This document shows, piece by piece, positions 19,616-64,000 of a stretch of DNA of 64,000 nt. Source of the DNA: Octopus sinensis. Lineage: Eukaryota. The notes below the pieces were generated by a model, which was not told the DNA's origin, ran no database searches, and saw only the letters and a program-made list of their open reading frames with translations. Numbering within the stretch: the first letter of the stretch is position 1; each line of letters starts with the position of its first letter. Both the position numbers and the translations under genes were made by a program. Where the stretch lies: positions 151,652,001 to 151,716,000 of the forward strand of contig NC_042997.1 in assembly GCF_006345805.1 (NCBI RefSeq), given 5' to 3'.

Positions 19616-19792
19616 TTCTTCTTCTTCTTCTTCTTCTTCTTCTTCTTCTTCTTCTTCTTCTTCTTCTTCTTCTTCTTCTTCTTCTTCTTCTTCTTCTTCT
19701 TCTTCTTCTTCTTCTTCTTCTTCTCTTCTTCTTCTTCTTCTTCTTCTTCTTCTTCTTCTTCTTCTTCTTCTTCTTCTTCTTCTTCTTCTTCT
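19616..19792 (+). repeat. (TTC)n microsatellite, ~59 units
   Basis: Seen directly; one single-base slip near 19724. Confidence 0.95.
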
Positions 19793-21034: not shown

Positions 21035-21311
21035 AATACATTAGATCAAATAGTATTCTGCTATAGGCCCTATTAGATTCCCCCACTAGCCTCCTGAAGT
21101 AACGTAGACACCAAAATGCAGTCCCTCTAATCAACCTCTTGAGAAAGTATTTAGACGCAGGTTATATACCGACAGCTCACATCCCAGTCTGTCATCCCGG
21201 TTTTCAAACAGGCCAACGGATCCCTCGCTGACAACTATCGCCCAATCTCACTCACCTCCCATATCATCTAAGTATTTGAAAAGGAGGTTAAATGAAGGAT
21301 AGTTGGCTTTC
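21035..21311 (+). mobile_element. CR1/L2-type LINE RT relic, left part
   Basis: Translates to VIPVFKQANGSLADNYRPISLTSH..IVGF; continues after the insertion at 25995. Confidence 0.75.
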
Positions 21312-21482
21312 GGTAAAATTACAGATTAACACCCGCACGATTTTCACTAAGAAAAAAAAAAACTCGGATTTTTTGCGTGGGATCAAGTACCCTGACCTCC
21401 TAATATGCTGCAAATCCCATATTTTGGTCCGGAATTGCTCCGGAAGGGGGGGGGTAACACGCCCCCCTCGGAATTTTCACAA
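21312..21482 (+). repeat. Left TIR (~170 bp)
   Basis: Reverse complement of 25820-25994 apart from homopolymer length differences and a few substitutions. Confidence 0.9.
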
Positions 21483-21742
21483 GGAAGAAGAAAAAAACCT
21501 CAGATTTCTTGCGTGGAATCAAGTACCCTGACCTCCTAATATGCTGCAAATCCCATATTTTGGTCCGGAAAGGGGGGGTAACCCCCCCCCCGGAATTTTC
21601 ACAAGGAAAAAAACAATCAGATTTTTGCGTGGAATCAAGTAACTTGACCTCCTAATATGCTGCAAATCCCATATTTTGGACCGGAATTGCTCCGGAAAGG
21701 TGGGGTAACCCCCTCCCCCGGAATTTTCACAAGGAAAAAAAA
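21365..21742 (+). repeat. Three tandem ~120-130-bp subterminal repeats
   Basis: gatttttgcgtggaatcaagta..ctcctaatatgctgcaaatcccatattttgg..ggaattttcacaagg x3 on the left, x1 in the right TIR. Confidence 0.85.
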
Positions 21743-22079
21743 ATAACATATCAATAATTTAGAAAAGAAACATTTCTAGAAAATAGTAAATTGAAGTGTG
21801 AACAAATCATTGGGCAAAAGAAGATTTGGCATACTGTCATGCCAAATCGTCAGAAGTGAAAGTCGTCAACTTCGTGTATTTGCGTCAGGTTCGCTGTTAC
21901 GCTTATAAAACAATTGAAGTTCAGTTTAAAGTTTATAAATAAATACATTTCATTCCATGTTCTGTTTAAACTTTATAAATAAATATATTCTTGCAGTGTG
22001 TGTATATGTGGCTATATGTCTGACTAATGTGTGTGTCTGTATTTATCGTATGTGTGTATAAGTAGTTATATGCTTATAT

Positions 22080-22151
22080 TATCCATTATAGTAATATTTG
22101 TCTGTTGAAACCTGTTTTAAGGCGGTCAATAGTTTAATTAAAGATGTATCT

Positions 22152-22203
<52 letters not shown>

Positions 22204-23470
22204 GTGTATATATACATGTGTATACATATATATATATATATATATATAAATATATATATACACATGTCTATATATATACACATGTATATATATATATAAA
22301 TATATATATATAAATATATATATATATACACATGTATATATATATACATGTATAGACACATCTTTAATTAAACTATTGACCGCCTTAAAACGGGTTTCAA
22401 CAGACAAATATTACTATAATGGATAATGTAATGGATAAAATTCAGACAAACTTACCTCTTGCTGTCAAAAAAAGTGGATTAATTCTCAGCAAAACATACT
22501 GTTATGCTAGACCAGTGGTTTTCAACCAGGGTTCCGCAAGAAGTTGCAAAACTGCTAAAATCGGCAGTAATTTTTAATTCTCCTGTGCAGATATGCGTGC
22601 ATAAGACTATTAAATTATTGCACAGGGGTTCCTCGAGCCAGTGGAATGTTTGAATTACGCTGTGTGGTTTCAGTTTCTAATTTTTGCTTCTGATCTCTCT
22701 TGCCCCCCCCCTCTCTATCTCAGTTGTTCATTCTGCTGATATTTAGAAAAGTTTTCGCGCCAAGTTTTGTTGTGGGCGGGAAAAGATGAACGATTTAAAA
22801 TAAATATACCTTAATTGTAGTGTGAGAAAGTATATATATTCTGATGATAAAATATATTATCTTTCAAAAACATCCCAAATTTATAGACTATATCGTGTAT
22901 GTTTAAGAAATGGTTTATGAGACATTGTTCATCTGTCTCCCCACCACACCTCCACCTACACAAAAATTAGTTTGAGATAGAGAGGGCGGCACAGAGAGAG
23001 ATCAGAAGCAAAAATTAGAACCTGACACTATCACAGAGCGTAATTCAAACATTCCACTGGCTCGAGGAACCCCTGTACAATAATTTAATAGTCTTATGCA
23101 CACATATCTGCACAGGAGAATTAAAAATTACTGCCGATTTTAGCAGTTTTGCAACTTCTTGCGGAACCCTGGTTGAAAACCACTGGTCTAGCATAACAGT
23201 ATGTTTTGCTGAGAATTAATCCACTTTTTTTGACAGCAAGAGGTAAGTTTGTCTGAATTTTATCCATTACTTTATCCATTATAGTAATATTTGTCTGTTG
23301 AAACCCGTTTTAAGGCGGTCAATAGTTTAATTAAAGATGTGTCTATACATGTATATATATATATACATGTGTATATATATATATTTATATATATATATTT
23401 ATATTTACATGTGTATATATATAGACATGTGTATATATATATATATATTTATTATATATATATATATATA
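22080..23470. repeat. Nested long inverted repeat flanked by (TA)n-rich tracts, containing a mirrored hAT-like end
   Basis: 22344-22660 mirrors 23039-23355 with ~3 mismatches; an 80-bp terminal block is also present at 22080-22160. Confidence 0.8.
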
Positions 23471-23695
23471 TATCAATTAATCATTTAGGGTAGCAAAAAA
23501 TTCAGTAAAAATTTATCGCTACCAGCGGCCTAATGGAAAAGAGAAAATAGTCAAAGACTAAATATGTATAAATATAACAATTTAGGAATGGCCTGAACAG
23601 GCCATTCGTCCACCAGAAAGAGCAGCCATAACTCCAACCGCCAAGTAGTGTAATTCGGAAATAAGGTGAAAATTTAAAAACATTACCCTAATTCA

Positions 23696-23796
23696 TCTTT
23701 TATACGATGCATCGTTTCGGTGTCTTTAATGATAGACCAGCTTAATTAAATTAAATTAAGCTGGTCTACCATAGGTCACACTTCATCAGTAAAAGA
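23696..23796 (-). ncRNA. Type I hammerhead ribozyme motif, copy 1
   Basis: Minus strand: UCUUUUA-CUGAUGA-[stem II]-GAAA-CGAUGCAUCG-UA-UAAAAGA; 7-bp stem I, GUA cleavage triplet (A17 at 23703). Confidence 0.8.
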
Positions 23797-24170
23797 AACC
23801 TGGGAGAGACGGATATACACGAGGCTACTGTATCAATGCCTCGGGAATATCTGTCTTAAAATTTTCAAGACCAACGCATTCGCGCCAAACTTATCGGCAG
23901 CAAATATAAACTGCCGATTCAATCTCAGAATTAGTCAGAAAATTATCAATTAATCAATTTAGGGTAGCAAAAAATTCAGTAAAAATTTATCGCTACCAGC
24001 GGCCTAATGGAAAAGAGAAAATAGTCAAAGACTAAATATGTATAAATATAACAATTTAGGAATGGCCTGAACAGGCCATTCGTCCACCAGAAAGAGCAGC
24101 CATAACTCCAACCGCCAAGTAGTGTAATTCGGAAATAAGGTGAAAATTTAAAAACATTTACCCTAATTCA

Positions 24171-24271
24171 TCTTTTATACGATGCATCGTTTCGGTGTCT
24201 TTAATGATAGACCAGCTTAATTAAATTAAATTAAGCTGGTCTACCATAGGTCACACTTCATCAGTAAAAGA
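24171..24271 (-). ncRNA. Type I hammerhead ribozyme motif, copy 2
   Basis: Identical to copy 1, 475 nt away (A17 at 24178). Confidence 0.8.
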
Positions 24272-24714
24272 AACCTGGGAGAGACGGATATACACGAGGC
24301 TACTGTATCAATGCCTCGGGAATATCTGTCTTAAAATTTTCAAGACCAACGCATTCGCGCCAAACTTATCGGCAGCAAATATAAACTGCCGATTCAATCT
24401 CAGAATTAGTCAGAAAATTATCAATTAATCAATTTAGGGTAGCAAAAAATTCAGTAAAAATTTATCGCTACCAGCGGCCTAATGGAAAAGAGAAAATAGT
24501 CAAAGACTAAATATGTATAAATATAACAATTTAGGAATGGCCTGAACAGGCCATTCGTCCACCAGAAAGAGCAGCCATAACTCCAACCGCCAAGTAGTGT
24601 AATTCGGAAATAAGGTGAAAATTTAAAAACATTTACCCTAATTCATCTTTTATACGATGCATCGTTTCGGTGTCTTTAATGAGTAGCCTCGTGTATATCC
24701 GTCTCTCCCAGGTT

Positions 24715-24815
24715 TCTTTTACTGATGAAGTGTGACCTATGGTAGACCAGCTTAATTTAATTTAATTAAGCTGGTCTATCATTAAAGACACCGAAACGAT
24801 GCATCGTATAAAAGA
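24715..24815 (+). ncRNA. Type I hammerhead ribozyme motif, copy 3
   Basis: tctttta-ctgatga-agtgtgacc...gacacc-gaaa-cgatgcatcg-ta-taaaaga; predicted cut after 24808. Confidence 0.8.
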
Positions 24816-25187
24816 TGAATTAGGGTAAATGTTTTTAATTTTCACCTTATTTCCGAATTACACTACTTGGCGGTTGGAGTTATGGCTGCTCTTTCTGGTG
24901 GACGAATGGCCTGTTCAGGCCATTCCTAAATTGTTATATTTATACATATTTAGTCTTTGACTATTTTCTCTTTTCCATTAGGCCGCTGGTAGCGATAAAT
25001 TTTTACTGAATTTTTTGCTACCCTAAATTGATTAATTGATAATTTTCTGACTAATTCTGAGATTGAATCGGCAGTTTATATTTGCTGCCGATAAGTTTGG
25101 CGCGAATGCGTTGGTCTTGAAAATTTTAAGACAGATTTCCCGAGGCATTGATACAGTAGCCTCGTGTATATCCGTCTCTCCCAGGTT

Positions 25188-25288
25188 TCTTTTACTGATG
25201 AAGTGTGACCTATGGTAGACCAGCTTAATTTAATTTAATTAAGCTGGTCTATCATTAAAGACACCGAAACGATGCATCGTATAAAAGA
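25188..25288 (+). ncRNA. Type I hammerhead ribozyme motif, copy 4
   Basis: Identical motif; predicted cut after 25281. Confidence 0.8.
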
Positions 25289-25659
25289 TGAATTAGGGTA
25301 AATGTTTTTAAATTTTCACCTTATTCCGAATTACACTACTTGGCGGTTGGAGTTATGGCTGCTCTTCTGGTGGACGAATGGCCTGTTCAGGCCATTCCTA
25401 AATTGTTATATTTATACATATTTAGTCTTTGACTATTTTCTCTTTTCCATTAGGCCGCTGGTAGCGATAAATTTTTACTGAATTTTTTGCTACCCTAAAT
25501 TGATGAATTGATAATTTTCTGACTAATTCTGAGATTGAATCGGCAGTTTATATTTGCTGCCGATAAGTTTGGCGCGAATGCGTTGGTCTTGAAAATTTTA
25601 AGACAGATTTCCCGAGGCATTGATACAGTAGCCTCGTGTATATCCGTCTCTCCCAGGTT

Positions 25660-25760
25660 TCTTTTACTGATGAAGTGTGACCTATGGTAGACCAGCTTAA
25701 TTTAATTTAATTAAGCTGGTCTATCATTAAAGACACCGAAACGATGCATCGTATAAAAGA
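25660..25760 (+). ncRNA. Type I hammerhead ribozyme motif, copy 5
   Basis: Identical motif; predicted cut after 25753. Confidence 0.8.
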
Positions 25761-25819
25761 TGAATTAGGGTAAATGTTTTTAAATTTTCACCTTATTTCC
25801 GAATTACACTACTTGGCGG

Positions 25820-25994
25820 TTGTGAAAATTCCGGGGGGGGGGTGTTACCCCCCCCCTTTCCGGAGCAATTCCGGACCAAAATATGGGATTTGCAGCATAT
25901 TAGGAGGTCAGGGTACTTGATCCCACGCAAAAAATCCGAGTTTTTTTTTTTTTTCTTAGTGAAAATCGTGCGGGTGTTAATCTGTAATTTTACC
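25820..25994 (-). repeat. Right TIR (~175 bp)
   Basis: Ends ...cgtgcgggtgttaatctgtaattttacc, followed by TSD tggctttc. Confidence 0.9.
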
Positions 25995-26530
25995 TGGCTT
26001 TCTGGAGAGCCACAATCTCCTCAATTCAAACCAGCATGTGACAGGGACTGTCTAACACAATTCTTACATTGGTATCAGGTTCGATATCTGATGTCAGATT
26101 TCTTGAATTCAGTAAAGAGCTCGAGAGAGTCGACCACAATATCCCACTGTCAAAACTGTCAAATGTTTGAATCCGTGAAAAACTACTGCACTGTATTGAG
26201 TATCTCCTGGAGTGCAGAACACAATATGTTGTGATCGGTGGAATCCACTCAAGCCCAGCAAATCACCAGTGCCTGCTTCTGTTTATAGCCTATATGAACG
26301 ACATTTCAAGCATCATAAAACACAAAGAAGTAAAAATATTTGCCGACGACTCTATGCCCCAGAAAATTATCAACGGAGAAGACCGAACTGAGCTCCAGTC
26401 TGATCTACAAGCTGTAAGTCAATGGTCAGACAAAAACAAAATGCAGCTAAACGAGGAAAAATTGTAACTGATGCTAAAACAACCATGTTCACTTCTTTCA
26501 GGGGAATCACTCGCAGTATCTAATAGTATC
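25995..26530 (+). mobile_element. CR1/L2-type LINE RT relic, right part
   Basis: GFLESHNLLNSNQH, DVRFLEFSKELERVDH (DFSKAFD-like) and LFIAYMNDISSIIKHKEVKIFADD. Confidence 0.8.
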
Positions 26531-38050: not shown

Positions 38051-38262
38051 CCATATTAAAAAGCAACAAAAATATTATAAAAACTGTTACTCAGAGTTTC
38101 ACGTTCCCGTTCTTCAGACAGTTTTGTTTAGAACGAGTACGTGAAACTCTGAGTATCAGTTTTTGTGATATTTTTGCTGCTTTTTAATAAAGCAAATTAT
38201 TCTACCTCTCGTATTCGAGTACTGCTTTTCTAACTTGTTTCGCATTTATGTGCTTAGTCTGG
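38051..38262. mobile_element. Short Penelope-type head-to-head element between (TA)n tracts
   Basis: The segment cgtgaaactctgagta..agttttt..atatttttg..gctttttaata occurs on both strands; it contains a hammerhead motif. Confidence 0.6.
38080..38125 (-). ncRNA. Canonical minimal type I hammerhead ribozyme motif
   Basis: AAAACUGU-CUGAAGA-ACG(GGAA)CGU-GAAA-CUCUGAG-UA-ACAGUUUU: 8-bp stem I, GNRA-capped stem II, GUA site. Confidence 0.8.
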
Positions 38263-44218: not shown

Positions 44219-44393
44219 CTTCTTCTTCTTCTTCTTCTTCTTCTTCTTCTTCTTCTTCTTCTTCTTCTTCTTCTTCTTCTTCTTCTTCTTCTTCTTCTTC
44301 TTCTTCTTCTTCTTCTTCTTCTTCTTCTTCTTCTTCTTCTTCTTCTTCTTCTTCTTCTTCTTCTTCTTCTTCTTCTTCTTCTTCTTCTTCTTC
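44219..44393 (+). repeat. (TTC)n microsatellite within a (CAT/CAG)-rich tract
   Basis: Seen directly; explains the poly-E/K/F/L ORFs. Confidence 0.95.
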
Positions 44394-56593: not shown

Positions 56594-57847
56594 CATAAAT
56601 AATGCGTTTTTTTTATACTTCTCTTATTTTCCAAAATTAAGATAAAGTTCTTTTTTAATCTAAAATATACTCTCCTTCATTTTCTACAATGCCCTTCCAT
56701 CTATCTGTTAGACTTGCAAGGCCCCTCTTCCAAAATTCACTTGTCCGTGACGAAAAATATTATTCCAGTACTGTTCTGACCTCATCTATAAAATTCATAT
56801 TTTTTCCATTCAAATGTTTTTGAAGAATGCGAAATAGATAGTAATCAGATGGAGCAATGTCTGGCGAATATTGTGGGTGGGGCATGGTTTTCCATTCAAA
56901 CTGCTCCAAACGTTCGAATGTCATGCTCGCTGTATGTGGCGGAACATTATCCTGATGGAAGAACACCTTTCGTCTTGAAACCAAAGATGGTTGATTCTCT
57001 TCTAGGGCTGTCTTAAGCCGCTCAAGCTGCTCGCAATAAATCTCTTTTGTTATCATTTTGTTTGAGTTTAAAAGTTTAAAGTGAATTAAACCTTTCATAT
57101 CCTACCAAACAGATAACAACATGTTATGTAGGTGAAGACCTTCTTTAGCCAAGGGTACCGGTGTTTCTCCTTTCCCTACCCACTGACTGCGGCGCTTGAC
57201 ATCTTTATAGAGTACCCATTTCTCATTGCCAGTCACTATTCAGTTCAAAAGTAGTTTATTCTTGAGACTTGACAGCAAAGAAGAGCACACATTCACACTC
57301 AAATTTGTGAGGAACTCATTGATCTAAATTGCTGACTTTGCTGATGGCACGCAGGTGTCGATGAATGGTTGAATGACCAAATCCGAGCTTCTCTGTTAGT
57401 AGCTCAACAGCTATAATACGACTTTGCTCCACCAGGGTTTGCAGGACGTCCTTGTCGAGCTTCACTGATCTTCAAGGATGAGGCTCGTCTTCTAGGTTGT
57501 AGTTTCTGGCTCGAAATTTCTTGAACCACCATTGACACTGGCTTACGCTTATTGTCCGATCTTCATATACTGCATTGATATTCCTGGCACCTTGCGTTGC
57601 GTCGTTGCCTTTATTGAATTCATGAAGCAAAATATGGCGAATATGCTCCTTTGTCACTTCCATTATAGCTTTGAAACAGTAACTTAAAATCGAACTGCAC
57701 TCTTCAAAACATGTACTAAGAATAAGTTCAAGGTAAAATCACCACCTTCTTTTATAGCAAATTGGTGCAGGTAGTTTATCCTACCCACCCTCCGGCTTTT
57801 AGTTCATGCAACTGAAAAGACTGCACTATTTGTGGGAAGACCCAATA
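56594..57847 (-). mobile_element. Mariner (DD34D) element, near full length, defective transposase
   Basis: HTH MEVTKEHIRHILLHEF..QWWFKKF; VTGNEKWVLY; HQDNVPPH-34aa-SPDIAPSDYYLF; TIR tattgggtcttcccacaaatagtgc with TA at 57846-57847; other TIR eroded. Confidence 0.9.
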
Positions 57848-61789: not shown

Positions 61790-62760
61790 TAAACATCAAC
61801 TGAAGGTTTAGAGATTATTTTTTCGTACCTCTTCTCCTTCCGTTGTTCTGCATTGCCGATGTTCTCTTCCCATGGCACTGTCAGCTCTAGCAAAATTTCA
61901 ATTCTCTGTTCTATGTTCCATAGGATTAAGTCTGGTCTTTTTGTCGTTTTTATGAATGGAAATACTGTCTTTCCAAATCCGTGGCCAGCTCCCAATATCC
62001 CTTCTCTAAAACTGCCTTCCAATAGTGTCGTGTTAGTTTCAGTTCCAGCAGTCAGAGCCGACCAGCTTTTTGGTGGTACAAGCTTTTGAACCAGGAGGAG
62101 GGCGCGCTATGACCGAGACCGCTACCTGCCAATCAGCGATGCTGCTTAAGTGTCAGCAAGTCTCACCTAGTGATGCTATTTCCCAGCCAGTATGTAATGG
62201 CTTTCAAGCCACTTTCGGTCTTCTCGCGTCAGCCACATATAGAAGCTCGCTTTTTCGACTGCCTCCTGTATCCTCCCTATTACTTTCTCAGCTCTGAGCT
62301 CGAAACTGCCAACCTTCTTTTGAATACGTTATCATTTTCTTTTCAATGAAGCCACTAGCGCCCACTGCCAGGTGTTAATACTCGACAGTCCATCCCTATT
62401 CTCTGCACTCTTCGATTATTTTTTCGTACCTCTTCTCCTTCCGTTGCTCTGCATTGCCGATGTTTTCTTCCCATGGCACTGTCAGCTCTAGCAAAATTTC
62501 AATTCTCTGTTCTATGTTCCATAGGATTAAGTCCAGTCTTTTCGTCGTTTTTATAAATGGAAATACTGTCAGTCTTTCCAAATCCGTGGCCAGCTCCCAA
62601 TATCCCTTCAATCTTTCGTCTGTCTCGTATATTTTATTTGAAGGCCTGGCCTTGTGTCCTTTTCCCTCCTATTGCGCTTTTCCACTTGTTCATTGTTCTC
62701 GGTTTTGTTTATTTTTTGGGCTATTAGTCAAGTATATAGGCATTGATGTAGCGGATATCT
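61790..62760 (-). mobile_element. R2-superfamily (HERO-like) non-LTR retrotransposon 3' fragments with restriction-like endonuclease, two tandem pieces
   Basis: RPDLILW..ILLELTVPWEENI..RKEKRY..ECRE*GW..VGASGF..EAVEKASFYMWL (PD..D/ExK RLE); 61813-62004 is ~95% identical to 62414-62609 by eye. Confidence 0.75.
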
Positions 62761-63042: not shown

Positions 63043-64000
63043 CAGTTGCGGCCAAAATGTTCAGAACGGCATTGTTTTCGTCAGAAAAGTAGGTATAAGT
63101 TTTTATTAAAGTTGTTTTATATTCTATAATTTTCACACACAATAAATACAATATTAATTATTATTGTCTGAGAGGATAATACAAAAGTTATGGATGATTT
63201 AGTGATTTACTTTAAAACCCATGGCAGCCAAAAGTATCAGAACGGTTGAAAAAAATAACAAAATAATCAAAAATGACAGAGAATACTCGAATTGTTTAAT
63301 ATCTAGTGTGAAGCCCTTTAGCTTCAATCACACTTTGACATCTTCGACTGCATGAGGAAATTAAATTTTCAATTTCTTGCTGGGTGATCTTATTCCATTT
63401 TTCCCGCAGGGCATTCCATAATTGCTCGGTTGTTTTAGGATTTCTGGCTTTCGAACGTTCTCCTAGAATATTCCACACATTTTCAATAGGATTGAGATTT
63501 GGGTTTTGAGCAGGCCAATCCATAACAATAATCTTTTCAGCCTTGAGAAAGTTCATGACCACCTTAGCCTTGTGACATGGGGCATTGTCGTGCACGAATA
63601 TGGGCGGTCACTTAGTTGAATTTCTCAGCACAGGCAAGACATGATCTTTTACAAGTTGTTTATAAACACCTGCATTTACCTTTCCATGTAATCGCACCAA
63701 AGGGCCCACACCATCTCCAGATATCATCCCCCAAACCATGACACTTCCTCCACCAAATTTAACACTAGTCTTAAGGCATTTAGGCGACAATTTTTCACCT
63801 ACTTTTCGACGAACGAACCTTTTCCCATCTGTGAGCCAAATAACAAACTTAGATTCATCACGAAAATGCACCTTTTGCCATTTTTCTTGAGACCACAACA
63901 CATGTTCGGTTGCAAAGGTAAGACGACACTTTTTATTCTTGGAGCTGATCAGTTGCTTCACTGCAGGTGCTCTTGCTTGTAGGTCATATTCAACTAAACA
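63043..64000 (-). mobile_element. Tc1 (DD34E) element of IR/DR type, 5' part beyond window
   Basis: FRDESKF, HDNAPCH-34aa-NPIENVW; single in-frame TGA at 63608-63610; TIR cagttgcggccaaaatgttcagaacgg after TA, inner DR ggcagccaaaagtatcagaacgg at 63223-63245. Confidence 0.9.

What the first reader, a model, noticed from the sequence alone, without database searches (positions are those of the whole stretch)
23473..25821. Retrozyme-like tandem array: ~475-bp units carrying five identical type I hammerhead ribozyme motifs
Seen: the unit contains UCUUUUA-CUGAUGA-[long stem II]-GAAA-CGAUGCAUCG-UA-UAAAAGA, i.e. the full catalytic core, a perfect 7-bp stem I, a stem III and a GUA site. Five 101-nt copies are identical (23696, 24171 minus; 24715, 25188, 25660 plus), while the rest of the unit shows small indels. 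Cut-to-cut spacing is 475, 473 and 472 nt. Established: tandem non-coding repeats with type I hammerheads define metazoan non-LTR retrozymes (corals, bivalves, insects, salamanders), whose multimeric transcripts self-cleave to monomers that circularise; known monomers are mostly <=400 nt. Inference: this is a cephalopod retrozyme family with a large monomer that could yield ~475-nt circRNAs from transcription in either direction. I cannot check whether it is already catalogued.
Basis: partly seen in the sequence, partly recalled or inferred. Interest (0 to 1): 0.9.

Follow-up and report, generated by a model that had tools for sequence, protein, structure and literature searches.

The report
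Hammerhead-ribozyme tandem repeat, head-to-head
A 475-base non-coding repeat that carries a self-cleaving hammerhead RNA motif sits as two back-to-back arrays in junk DNA; it looks like a new family of the known "retrozyme" parasitic elements of animals, not a new kind of thing.

Summary
Window 23471-25822 holds about 5 copies of a 472-475-nt unit. There are five identical 101-nt type I hammerhead motifs, plus a sixth copy truncated at its 5' end.

- The array is two head-to-head arrays that meet at 24682.
- The base of helix II is an A.C mismatch, not G-C.
- No Rfam hammerhead model detects the motif.
- The hammerhead being identical while the rest of the unit varies is not statistically informative (about 7 differences, P about 0.19).

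Evidence in favour:
- The motif matches a strict descriptor about once in 3300 shuffled windows.
- The hammerhead fold lies 1.9 kcal/mol above the MFE.
- A natural two-copy transcript folds, unconstrained, into a double hammerhead through a perfectly palindromic 12-nt helix III.
- The unit is non-coding, 36% GC and strongly structured.

New finding: the arrays lie inside one 4,683-bp palindromic insertion (21312-25994). It has an 8-bp target-site duplication, splits a LINE reverse transcriptase, and has an empty site in a paralogous copy.

This layout matches insertions of Penelope-like elements. A related genome sampled here is full of similar hammerheads.

[quoted passage not shown] Cleavage, circular RNA and the cephalopod origin are untested.

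The parts
23471..24682 (-). Left arm: 2.55 units of the 475-nt repeat, hammerhead-sense on the minus strand. Its 5' end (24682) is truncated inside helix II. Its 3' end (23471) abuts (TA)n.
   Evidence: TRF; blastn; unit alignment
24682..25822 (+). Right arm: 2.41 units of the 472-473-nt repeat, hammerhead-sense on the plus strand. Its 5' end is at 24682. Its 3' end joins the terminal repeat at a TTG microhomology (25820-25822).
   Evidence: TRF
24715..24815 (+). Hammerhead motif, predicted cleavage after A24808. Identical copies lie at 25188-25288 (cut after 25281) and 25660-25760 (cut after 25753).
24171..24271 (-). Hammerhead motif on the minus strand, predicted cleavage between 24178 and 24177. 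An identical copy lies at 23696-23796 (cut between 23703 and 23702).
24653..24682 (-). 5'-truncated hammerhead: only the 3' side of helix II, GAAA, helix III and the cleavage site. It lacks CUGAUGA, so it cannot cleave in cis.
24796..24807 (+). Perfect 12-nt palindrome ACGAUGCAUCGU (A15.1 to U16.1). It forms a 4-bp hairpin in a monomer and a 12-bp inter-copy helix III in a multimer (pairs with 25269-25280).
23344..23473 (.). (TA)n microsatellite abutting the 3' end of the left arm.
   Evidence: TRF; sequence
21312..25994 (.). The whole 4,683-bp imperfectly palindromic insertion that contains both arrays. Each arm reads, from the centre outwards: hammerhead units, then 136-nt repeats, then a 28-nt terminus.
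21304..21311 (.). Target-site duplication TGGCTTTC, left copy. The right copy is at 25995-26002.
   Evidence: empty site in L001
21312..21482 (+). Left terminus: GGTAAAATTACAG... plus the first 136-nt repeat. It is the inverted copy of 25820-25994 (2 substitutions and 2 homopolymer indels in 171 nt).
25820..25994 (-). Right terminus, the inverted copy of 21312-21482.
21076..21311 (+). Left half of the decayed LINE reverse transcriptase that the insertion splits. The right half is at 25995-26474.
   Evidence: Pfam RVT_1

Best explanation
The 472-475-nt unit is a non-autonomous, non-coding retroelement of the metazoan non-LTR retrozyme kind. It is a hammerhead-bearing repeat that depends on the machinery of Penelope-like elements (PLEs).

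Inferred life cycle: a multimeric transcript running from the centre outwards folds so that the palindromic helix III of two neighbouring copies pairs, forming a double hammerhead. Each core then cuts after GUA and releases monomers of about 473 nt. In the monomer, helix III is weak and an alternative pairing (UGAUG with CAUCG) hides the core, so the monomer is spared. A host RNA ligase can then circularise it. Monomeric or multimeric RNA is reverse-transcribed and integrated by a PLE-type enzyme that primes on both target strands. That would explain two 5'-truncated arrays lying head to head with their 3' ends pointing outwards.

Shown here: the motif, the repeat, the predicted folds, the head-to-head layout, and the 8-bp target-site duplication with its empty site.

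Inferred, not shown: transcription, cleavage, circularisation and the identity of the mobilising enzyme.
For: Motif and folding:
- All invariant core positions are present, the site is GUA and the topology is type I.
- The motif is rare by chance, about 1 in 3300 shuffled windows.
- The hammerhead-constrained fold is only 1.9 kcal/mol above the MFE.
- Two copies cofold into the double hammerhead at -89.5 kcal/mol, against 2 x -38.3 for separate monomers.
- The unconstrained MFE of the natural 588-nt two-copy transcript contains the 12-bp inter-copy helix III, a trans helix I and an unpaired core.

Unit properties:
- GC is 36.4%.
- The circular-monomer MFE has z = -6.1, with 63% of bases paired.
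- No ORF exceeds 68 aa and no protein homologue was found.

PLE-hammerhead hallmarks listed in PMC4209133 are present: a nucleotide after A9, a large helix II, and a palindromic 15.2-16.2 plus loop 3.

Insertion architecture:
- The layout matches PLE insertions, which are partial tandems with an inverted 5'-truncated copy (PMC8557442).
- PLE protein cleaves and extends both target strands (PMC11167929).
- An 8-bp target-site duplication and an empty site show that the surrounding insertion was mobile.

Precedent and comparison:
- A mismatch at the base of helix II is tolerated in the axolotl retrozyme HHR_Amex2, which has U.U and still cleaves (PMC7229834).
- 104 kb of a related genome holds at least 9 hammerheads of 4 families, all with a palindromic helix III. 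One is a 324-nt unit bounded by two hammerheads inside (TA)n.
Against: - No Rfam hammerhead model hits the motif, even at E<=10.
- The 10.1-11.1 pair is A.C. That pair is described as highly conserved G-C (PMC4209133).
- Helix II is about 65 nt, far longer than usual, and no loop-loop tertiary contacts could be assessed.
- All five copies are identical, so there is no covariation evidence.
- Only one locus is available. No other copy was found in any accessible collection.
- No PLE reverse transcriptase / GIY-YIG gene was identified, and the window was not fully screened for one.
- The target-site duplication flanks a composite that also holds unrelated repeats. The target TGGCTTTC is not AT-rich.
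- PLE-type hammerheads often cleave poorly in vitro (PMC4209133).
Confidence: 0.6

Rival explanations
1. A foldback-type or long-TIR DNA transposon. The 4.7-kb palindrome would be a class II element whose long inverted arms are built of tandem repeats (the 136-nt and 475-nt units). It would move by cut-and-paste, and the hammerhead would be a passenger or a relic.
For: - Inverted termini of 171-175 nt at 96.6% identity, made of tandem sub-repeats.
- A clean 8-bp target-site duplication with an empty site.
- The whole insertion is palindromic about 24682.
- The target is not AT-rich.
Against: - No transposase is present, and no other copy is available to show that both ends are conserved.
- The termini do not start with the hAT or P consensus (my own knowledge of these families).
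- The arms are 5'-truncated at different unit positions and joined by microhomology. That is what reverse-transcription products look like.
- Hammerhead-sense orientation is consistently centre-to-outside on both arms, which a DNA transposon does not require.
Confidence: 0.15
2. An ordinary young tandem repeat (satellite) whose hammerhead-like motif is decayed or fortuitous and does not cleave. The head-to-head structure would come from a replication or repair rearrangement.
For: - A.C at 10.1-11.1.
- No Rfam hit.
- No covariation; the identity of the hammerhead copies is uninformative.
- The descriptor would still give some chance matches in a genome of gigabase size (extrapolated).
- Microhomology at the junctions also fits replication-based template switching.
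Against: - The same motif also has a perfect 12-nt palindromic helix III, a 19-bp distal helix II and a double-hammerhead ground state. None of these was required by the descriptor.
- It sits exactly once per unit of a repeat with the size, GC content and structure of retrozymes.
- The lineage is demonstrably rich in hammerhead elements.
Confidence: 0.15
3. The inverted duplication at 24682 is an assembly artefact (a fold-back chimeric long read), and the real locus is a single one-orientation array.
For: Palindromic joins are a known failure mode of long-read data (my own knowledge). Most differences between copies are homopolymer indels typical of read errors.
Against: - The join is not a perfect palindrome.
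- The arms differ by 1.7 kb of extra sequence and by an arm-specific indel.
- Both outer ends are anchored in the two halves of one LINE, in the correct orientation, with a target-site duplication and an empty site in a paralogue.
Confidence: 0.05
4. An endogenised copy of a viroid-like or delta-like circular RNA replicon rather than a genomic retroelement.
For: The monomer is about 473 nt, structured, and carries a hammerhead able to act as a double hammerhead, as in avsunviroids.
Against: - A ribozyme is present in one polarity only, and no other ribozyme family was found on either strand.
- There is no ORF.
- It is DNA-encoded in tandem within a transposon-like insertion.
- GC content and architecture match the host's other hammerhead repeats.
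Confidence: 0.03

Closest known systems
Metazoan non-LTR retrozymes (Cervera & de la Pena 2020, PMC7229834; Li et al. 2026 preprint 10.64898/2026.07.22.740005)
   Same: - Tandem non-coding repeats of a few hundred bp.
- One type I hammerhead per unit.
- GC below 45%.
- Structured monomer RNA.
- A target-site duplication longer than 4 bp.
- Proposed dependence on PLEs.
   Different: - Helix II is about 65 nt, against about 4 bp in canonical type I motifs.
- The base of helix II is an A.C mismatch.
- No recognisable loop 1 / loop 2 contacts.
- Helix III is a 12-nt perfect palindrome.
- The arrays are head to head and embedded in a larger palindromic insertion.
- Expression and circles are not shown.
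Hammerheads in the pseudo-LTRs of Penelope-like elements, and PLE insertion architecture (PMC4209133, PMC8557442, PMC11167929)
   Same: - An extra or unpaired nucleotide after A9.
- An enlarged helix II.
- A palindromic helix III, implying action as a dimer.
- Partial tandems plus an inverted 5'-truncated copy.
- Proximity to (TA)n.
   Different: - No RT / GIY-YIG ORF lies between the repeats.
- Helix I is a full 7 bp and helix III is not minimal.
- The pair after the extra A is followed by an unpaired C on the 3' side.
- The target of the outer insertion is not AT-rich.
Double hammerheads of newt satellite 2 and ASBVd (Forster et al. 1988, as cited in PMC4209133)
   Same: The monomeric helix III is weak (-2 kcal/mol) and palindromic. 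Two tandem copies form an extended helix III, so multimers cleave and monomers are protected.
   Different: Here the monomeric helix III still has 4 bp, so some single-motif activity is possible. The sequences are unrelated.
Hammerhead satellites such as Dolichopoda pDo500 and Schistosoma Sm-alpha (my own knowledge; cited generically in PMC7229834)
   Same: Tandem repeats of about 330-500 bp encoding an active type I hammerhead. This shows that a unit of about 475 nt has precedent.
   Different: Those are large genomic arrays. Here only about 5 units are seen, inside a mobile insertion.
Foldback transposons (my own knowledge)
   Same: A long, nearly loop-less palindrome whose arms are made of tandem sub-repeats, flanked by a short target-site duplication.
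   Different: - The arms are truncated at different points.
- The ribozyme orientation is consistent on both arms.
- The junctions show microhomology.
- No transposase or sibling copies were seen.

Membership tests
Hammerhead ribozyme, type I | Invariant core C3 U4 G5 A6 N7 G8 A9 ... G12 A13 A14 | tested here: met
   CUGAUGA and GAAA are in the right order and spacing in all five copies.
Hammerhead ribozyme, type I | A15.1-U16.1 pair followed by H17 (not G) at the cleavage site | tested here: met
   A15.1...U16.1 then A17, giving a GUA site.
Hammerhead ribozyme, type I | Three helices around the core, with helix I open (5' and 3' ends in helix I) | tested here: met
   Helix I is 7 bp. Helix II is 4 bp, an internal loop, then 19 bp. 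Helix III is 4 bp, or 12 bp between copies. The constrained fold is +1.9 kcal/mol over the MFE.
Hammerhead ribozyme, type I | G10.1-C11.1 pair closing helix II | tested here: not met
   The position is A.C, or equivalently an unpaired A after A9 and an unpaired C before G12. Precedents: a U.U mismatch in the active axolotl HHR_Amex2 (PMC7229834), and G-C / G.U / A.C variation among sibling copies in L002.
Hammerhead ribozyme, type I | Match to the curated covariance models (Rfam clan CL00010) | tested here: not met
   No hammerhead family was hit at gathering score or at E<=10. Control: a textbook-like hammerhead in L007 reaches only 25.8 bits against a gathering score of 48.5. The negative result therefore carries little weight.
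Hammerhead ribozyme, type I | Compensatory changes in the helices across family members | tested here: inconclusive
   All five copies are identical, and no diverged copy could be retrieved.
Hammerhead ribozyme, type I | Site-specific self-cleavage | not testable with these tools
   This needs in vitro transcription of monomer and dimer constructs.
Metazoan non-LTR retrozyme | Tandem repeats (dimers to multimers) of roughly 150-1000 bp, each with a type I hammerhead | tested here: met
   Units of 472-475 nt, 2.4 plus 2.6 copies, one motif per unit.
Metazoan non-LTR retrozyme | Low GC (<45-50%) and no coding capacity, LTR, PBS or PPT | tested here: met
   GC is 36.4%. The longest stop-free stretch is 68 aa. 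There were no homologues among 5.8 billion proteins.
Metazoan non-LTR retrozyme | Monomer RNA predicted to be stable and highly self-paired | tested here: met
   The circular MFE is -140.7 kcal/mol, z = -6.1 against shuffles, with 63% of bases paired. The antisense strand gives z = -7.4.
Metazoan non-LTR retrozyme | Expressed as linear and circular monomer RNA | not testable with these tools
   No transcriptome of the source organism is accessible.
Metazoan non-LTR retrozyme | Many dispersed genomic copies, some with target-site duplications | tested here: inconclusive
   Only one locus was seen. An 8-bp duplication exists, but it flanks the larger composite insertion.
Autonomous Penelope-like element | ORF with a reverse transcriptase and a GIY-YIG endonuclease between pseudo-LTRs | tested here: not met
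   No ORF lies in or between the units. The neighbouring RT is a LINE-type RVT_1 that the insertion interrupts.
PLE-type insertion (autonomous or dependent) | Partial tandem plus an adjacent inverted 5'-truncated copy, with 3' ends outwards | tested here: met
   Two arrays meet 5'-to-5' at 24682 and are truncated at different unit positions. This layout is described in PMC8557442.
PLE-type insertion (autonomous or dependent) | Preference for (TA)n or AT-rich targets | tested here: inconclusive
   The left arm ends in (TA)n at 23344-23473. The outer duplication TGGCTTTC is not AT-rich.
Foldback / long-TIR DNA transposon | Long terminal inverted repeats and a target-site duplication of fixed length | tested here: met
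   Inverted termini of 171-175 nt and an 8-bp duplication. A PLE-type head-to-head insertion would show the same features.
Foldback / long-TIR DNA transposon | Sibling copies with both termini conserved, or an associated transposase | not testable with these tools

The most novel reading that the evidence does not exclude
The locus may be a frozen product of one PLE-type integration. In this reading, reverse transcription was primed on both target strands and, on each strand, ran about 2.5 turns around a circular (or multimeric) hammerhead RNA before the two cDNAs were joined by microhomology. That would be a direct genomic record linking retrozyme circular RNAs, rolling-circle reverse transcription and the PLE both-strand mechanism. 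The ribozyme would be an obligate double hammerhead with an unusually long (about 65-nt) helix II and an A.C pair at its base.
Probability: 0.25. Interest if true: 0.7.

Novelty: new member of a known kind. Interest (0 to 1): 0.45.

Why it matters
If the ribozyme is active, this adds a new hammerhead and retrozyme family, possibly in a clade where none has been catalogued. Its ribozyme tests the limits of the motif: a very long helix II, an A.C pair at position 10.1-11.1, and a helix III built for dimer-only action.

The more useful point is the locus itself. It has a clean target-site duplication, an empty site in a paralogue, and two 5'-truncated arrays lying head to head with microhomology at the joins. 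That is a well-preserved example of how such repeats are inserted. It fits the recent proposal that animal retrozymes ride on Penelope-like elements, whose protein primes on both DNA strands.

A transcript reading through the locus would also form a long double-stranded RNA, which is a plausible source of silencing small RNAs against the family. None of this changes the picture of what retrozymes are.

Tried and rejected
- **Rfam.** I searched at gathering score over the whole window and at E<=10 over 2.7 kb and over 131 nt. There was no hammerhead hit, only spurious miRNA-like hairpin matches. I kept this as a weak negative after the L007 control.
- **Exact-pattern scans.** I scanned metagenome, viral and GTDB genome contigs with two patterns. 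The result was 0 hits, plus one chance hit in a coding sequence (L004).
- **Protein route to other copies.** An exact look-up of the unit's ORFs and a homology search with concatenated stop-free translations both found nothing.
- **Sequence strings in the paper library.** No hits.
- **Organism identification.** The related contigs come from SRR11869385, DRR671604 and ERZ21867824. None of these accessions appears in the paper library, so 'cephalopod' stays unverified.
- **Pfam scan of raw six-frame DNA around 38 kb.** The tool refuses translations that contain stop codons. The window was therefore not fully screened for a PLE reverse transcriptase.
- **ARAGORN and the bacterial promoter/terminator scan.** Nothing relevant to a eukaryotic repeat.
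- **'Hammerhead conserved while the rest of the unit drifts'.** Rejected as evidence, because P is about 0.19.
- **Hammerhead in the 136-nt terminal repeats.** Considered and rejected; they contain no CUGANGA core.
- **Dating the arms.** The termini differ by 2 substitutions in 171 nt and the hammerhead arms by 1 in 945 (Fisher p = 0.063). This is only a hint that the hammerhead double array inserted later, at the (TA)n edge.
Full report
**1. The observation**

Tandem Repeats Finder reports two abutting arrays. One spans 23471-24682 (period 475, 2.6 copies) and the other 24682-25822 (period 472, 2.4 copies). Both show 99% matches.

Each reads UCUUUUA-CUGAUGA-[helix II]-GAAA-CGAUGCAUCG-UA|UAAAAGA. 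Predicted cleavage falls after 24808, 25281 and 25753 on the plus strand. On the minus strand it falls between 24178/24177 and between 23703/23702. The spacings are therefore 473, 472 and 475 nt. The unit occurs nowhere else in the 64-kb window.

My own descriptor required CUGANGA, GAAA, an A15.1-U16.1 pair, H17, helix I >=7 bp, helix II >=4 bp with one mismatch allowed at its base, and helix III >=4 bp. It matched once in 3300 dinucleotide-preserving shuffles of the window. The motif is therefore not a chance feature of this window. The five copies are one independent occurrence.

**2. Corrections**

- The pair that closes helix II (10.1-11.1) is A.C rather than G-C. An equivalent description is an unpaired A after A9 and an unpaired C before G12.
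- A sixth copy (24653-24682, minus strand) is truncated at its 5' end and lacks CUGAUGA.
- The copies differ by about 7 events, mostly 1-nt indels in homopolymers. None falls in the hammerhead, which is 21% of the unit, so P is about 0.19. This says nothing about selection.
- Rfam finds no hammerhead at gathering score, at E<=10 over 2.7 kb, or in a 131-nt search.
- As a control, a textbook-like hammerhead pair that I found in a related genome (L007) is also missed at gathering score. In the permissive mode it reaches only 25.8 and 20.3 bits, against a threshold of 48.5. The Rfam negative is real but weak.

**3. Folding**

- Constraining the 101-nt motif into the hammerhead costs only 1.9 kcal/mol relative to the MFE. 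The MFE differs by pairing UGAUG of the core with CAUCG of helix III.
- A15.1 to U16.1 is a perfect 12-nt palindrome, ACGAUGCAUCGU. As a hairpin it is worth -2 kcal/mol. Between two copies it is worth -20.7 kcal/mol.
- Two motifs cofold into exactly the double hammerhead at -89.5 kcal/mol, against 2 x -38.3 for separate monomers.
- The unconstrained MFE of the natural 588-nt transcript 24708-25295 contains three features of that fold: the inter-copy helix III (24796-24807 with 25269-25280), the trans helix I (24715-24721 with 25282-25288), and an unpaired first core.
- This is the classical arrangement in which multimers cleave and monomers are protected. It is described for newt, avsunviroid and PLE hammerheads (PMC4209133).
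- The 473-nt monomer is 36.4% GC. As a circle it folds to -140.7 kcal/mol (z = -6.1, 63% paired). The antisense strand is also structured (z = -7.4).
- No ribozyme is present in the antisense polarity.

**4. The locus**

The two arrays are head to head. Hammerhead-sense transcription runs from 24682 outwards on both strands.

- The minus arm starts inside helix II (UCAUUAAAGACACC...).
- The plus arm starts at GUAGCCUCG...
- The arms end at different unit positions, 233 and 68.
- The left 3' end abuts (TA)n at 23344-23473.
- The right 3' end joins the next repeat at a TTG microhomology.

Looking further out, 21312-21482 and 25820-25994 are inverted copies of each other (96.6% identity; 2 substitutions and 2 homopolymer indels). 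Immediately outside them lies the 8-bp direct repeat TGGCTTTC.

Removing 21312-26002 restores an in-frame LINE reverse transcriptase reading ...RIVGFLESHNLLNSNQH... (Pfam RVT_1). Homologous proteins run straight through that point. A paralogous LINE contig (L001) shows the uninterrupted site: window 21076-21311 matches L001 1-237, and window 25995-26474 matches L001 230-750, an 8-bp overlap.

The arrays therefore lie inside one 4,683-bp, imperfectly palindromic, mobile insertion. From the centre outwards, each arm reads hammerhead units, then 136-nt repeats, then a 28-nt terminus. The left arm has an extra 1.7 kb, consisting of a unique segment and a (TA)n-tailed palindrome at 22074-23472.

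The termini differ slightly more than the hammerhead arms do: 2 substitutions in 171 nt against 1 in 945 (Fisher p = 0.063). This leaves two possibilities that I cannot separate:

- The hammerhead double array inserted later, at the edge of (TA)n inside an older element.
- The whole insertion is one chimeric event.

**5. Comparison with the literature**

- Metazoan non-LTR retrozymes are tandem, AT-rich, non-coding repeats of 150-450 bp, each with a type I hammerhead. They are expressed as circular RNAs, and PLEs are suspected to mobilise them (PMC7229834).
- A 2026 preprint gives consensus lengths of 51-972 bp and derives them from PLE pseudo-LTRs (10.64898/2026.07.22.740005). A unit of 475 nt is therefore not unusually large.
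- PLE hammerheads have four hallmarks: a nucleotide between A9 and 10.1, a large helix II, a palindromic 15.2-16.2 plus loop 3, and dimeric action (PMC4209133). Three are seen here. The fourth is predicted.
- PLE insertions are partial tandems with an adjacent inverted 5'-truncated copy, and some clades favour (TA)n (PMC8557442).
- A purified PLE protein cleaves and extends both target strands (PMC11167929). That would produce exactly this head-to-head layout.
- A mismatch at the base of helix II has precedent. The axolotl HHR_Amex2 has U.U there and still cleaves, at 22% per hour as a monomer and efficiently as a dimer (PMC7229834).

**6. Comparative evidence obtained here**

A Tc1 transposase at the window's end led to long contigs of a related genome (ENA ERZ21867824; 80% amino-acid and 85% nucleotide identity). 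In 104 kb of that genome I found at least 9 credible hammerheads of 4 families, all with a palindromic helix III.

- One family (L002 16384 and 17538, spaced 1,153 nt apart) has the same architecture as the window motif. It has an unpaired nucleotide on each side of the helix II base and a long two-part helix II. The core is conserved while the helix II loop has diverged.
- Another family shows G-C, G.U and A.C at 10.1-11.1 among sibling copies. Its copies lie head to head next to (TA)n.
- A third is a 324-nt unit bounded by two canonical hammerheads inside (TA)n.

The window itself holds a second hammerhead-like motif at 38088-38125 (minus strand), inside a hairpin of about 140 nt flanked by (TA)n. 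The lineage is clearly rich in hammerhead elements, and the array is one more family of them.

**7. Verdict**

The feature is real. It is best read as a new family of the non-LTR retrozyme / PLE-dependent kind (confidence about 0.6). The rivals are:

- a foldback-type DNA transposon carrying a hammerhead satellite (0.15);
- an inert satellite with a decayed motif (0.15);
- an assembly artefact (0.05);
- an endogenised RNA replicon (0.03).

Cleavage, circular RNA, the mobilising enzyme, the copy number and the cephalopod origin were not testable here. No other copy of the unit was found in any accessible collection.

The finding is solid but incremental. The most interesting part is the well-preserved insertion architecture.

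Noticed in passing
window 38052-38192 (motif 38088-38125, minus strand): A second, compact hammerhead-like motif: AAAACUGU/CUGAAGA/ACG-GGAA-CGU/GAAA/CUCUGAG/U-A|ACAGUUUU. It sits inside a near-perfect hairpin of about 140 nt (-76.9 kcal/mol, z = -14.9). The left arm of the hairpin is an inverted copy truncated 4 nt upstream of GAAAC, and (TA)n flanks the whole. It looks like a tiny head-to-head, 5'-truncated PLE-type insertion. Chance expectation is about 1.5e-3 per window, and there is no Rfam hammerhead hit.
   Followed up: partly
L002 16353-16491 and 17507-17644; L002 19647-20194; L005 7273-7306; L006 16408-16441; L007 11432-11789: A related genome (ENA ERZ21867824) carries at least four hammerhead families in 104 kb, all with a palindromic helix III. 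One is a 324-nt unit bounded by two canonical hammerheads inside (TA)n. Another consists of head-to-head short copies in which 10.1-11.1 varies between G-C, G.U and A.C.
   Followed up: partly
window 21340-21747 and 25826-25966: A 116-136-nt tandem repeat forms the outer part of both arms of the insertion (3.2 copies on the left, 1 on the right). Each unit contains a G9-10/C9-10 hairpin (GGGGGGGGGUAACACCCCCCCCC). I found no hammerhead core in it, and its identity is unknown.
   Followed up: partly
window 22074-23472: A nested palindrome: arms 22221-22722 and 22973-23472 (94% identity), separated by a 250-nt spacer, each ending in (TA)n. There is also a smaller (TA)n-centred palindrome at 22074-22431. 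It may be another head-to-head insertion of an element with a (TA)n tail.
   Followed up: no
window 21076-21311 and 25995-26474 (+): A decayed LINE-type reverse transcriptase (RVT_1) with frameshifts and stop codons, split by the 4.7-kb insertion. A paralogous uninterrupted copy is in Logan contig SRR11869385_3540908.
   Followed up: yes
window 63299-64000 (-) and 56763-57738 (-): A nearly intact C-terminal part of a Tc1-like transposase (one stop codon; 80% identical to P0010 and P0011), and fragments of a mariner-like transposase.
   Followed up: partly
window 61792-62106 (-) and 62399-62668 (-): Two copies of an ORF fragment ending ...RPDLILWNIEQRIEILLELTVPWEENIGNAEQRKEKRYEKII. It looks like a duplicated piece of another retroelement. 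I did not identify it.
   Followed up: no
window 19616-19792 and 44219-44393: Two long, almost perfect trinucleotide arrays, (TTC)59 and (CTT)58. The window as a whole is unusually dense in microsatellites, with 119 TRF rows.
   Followed up: no
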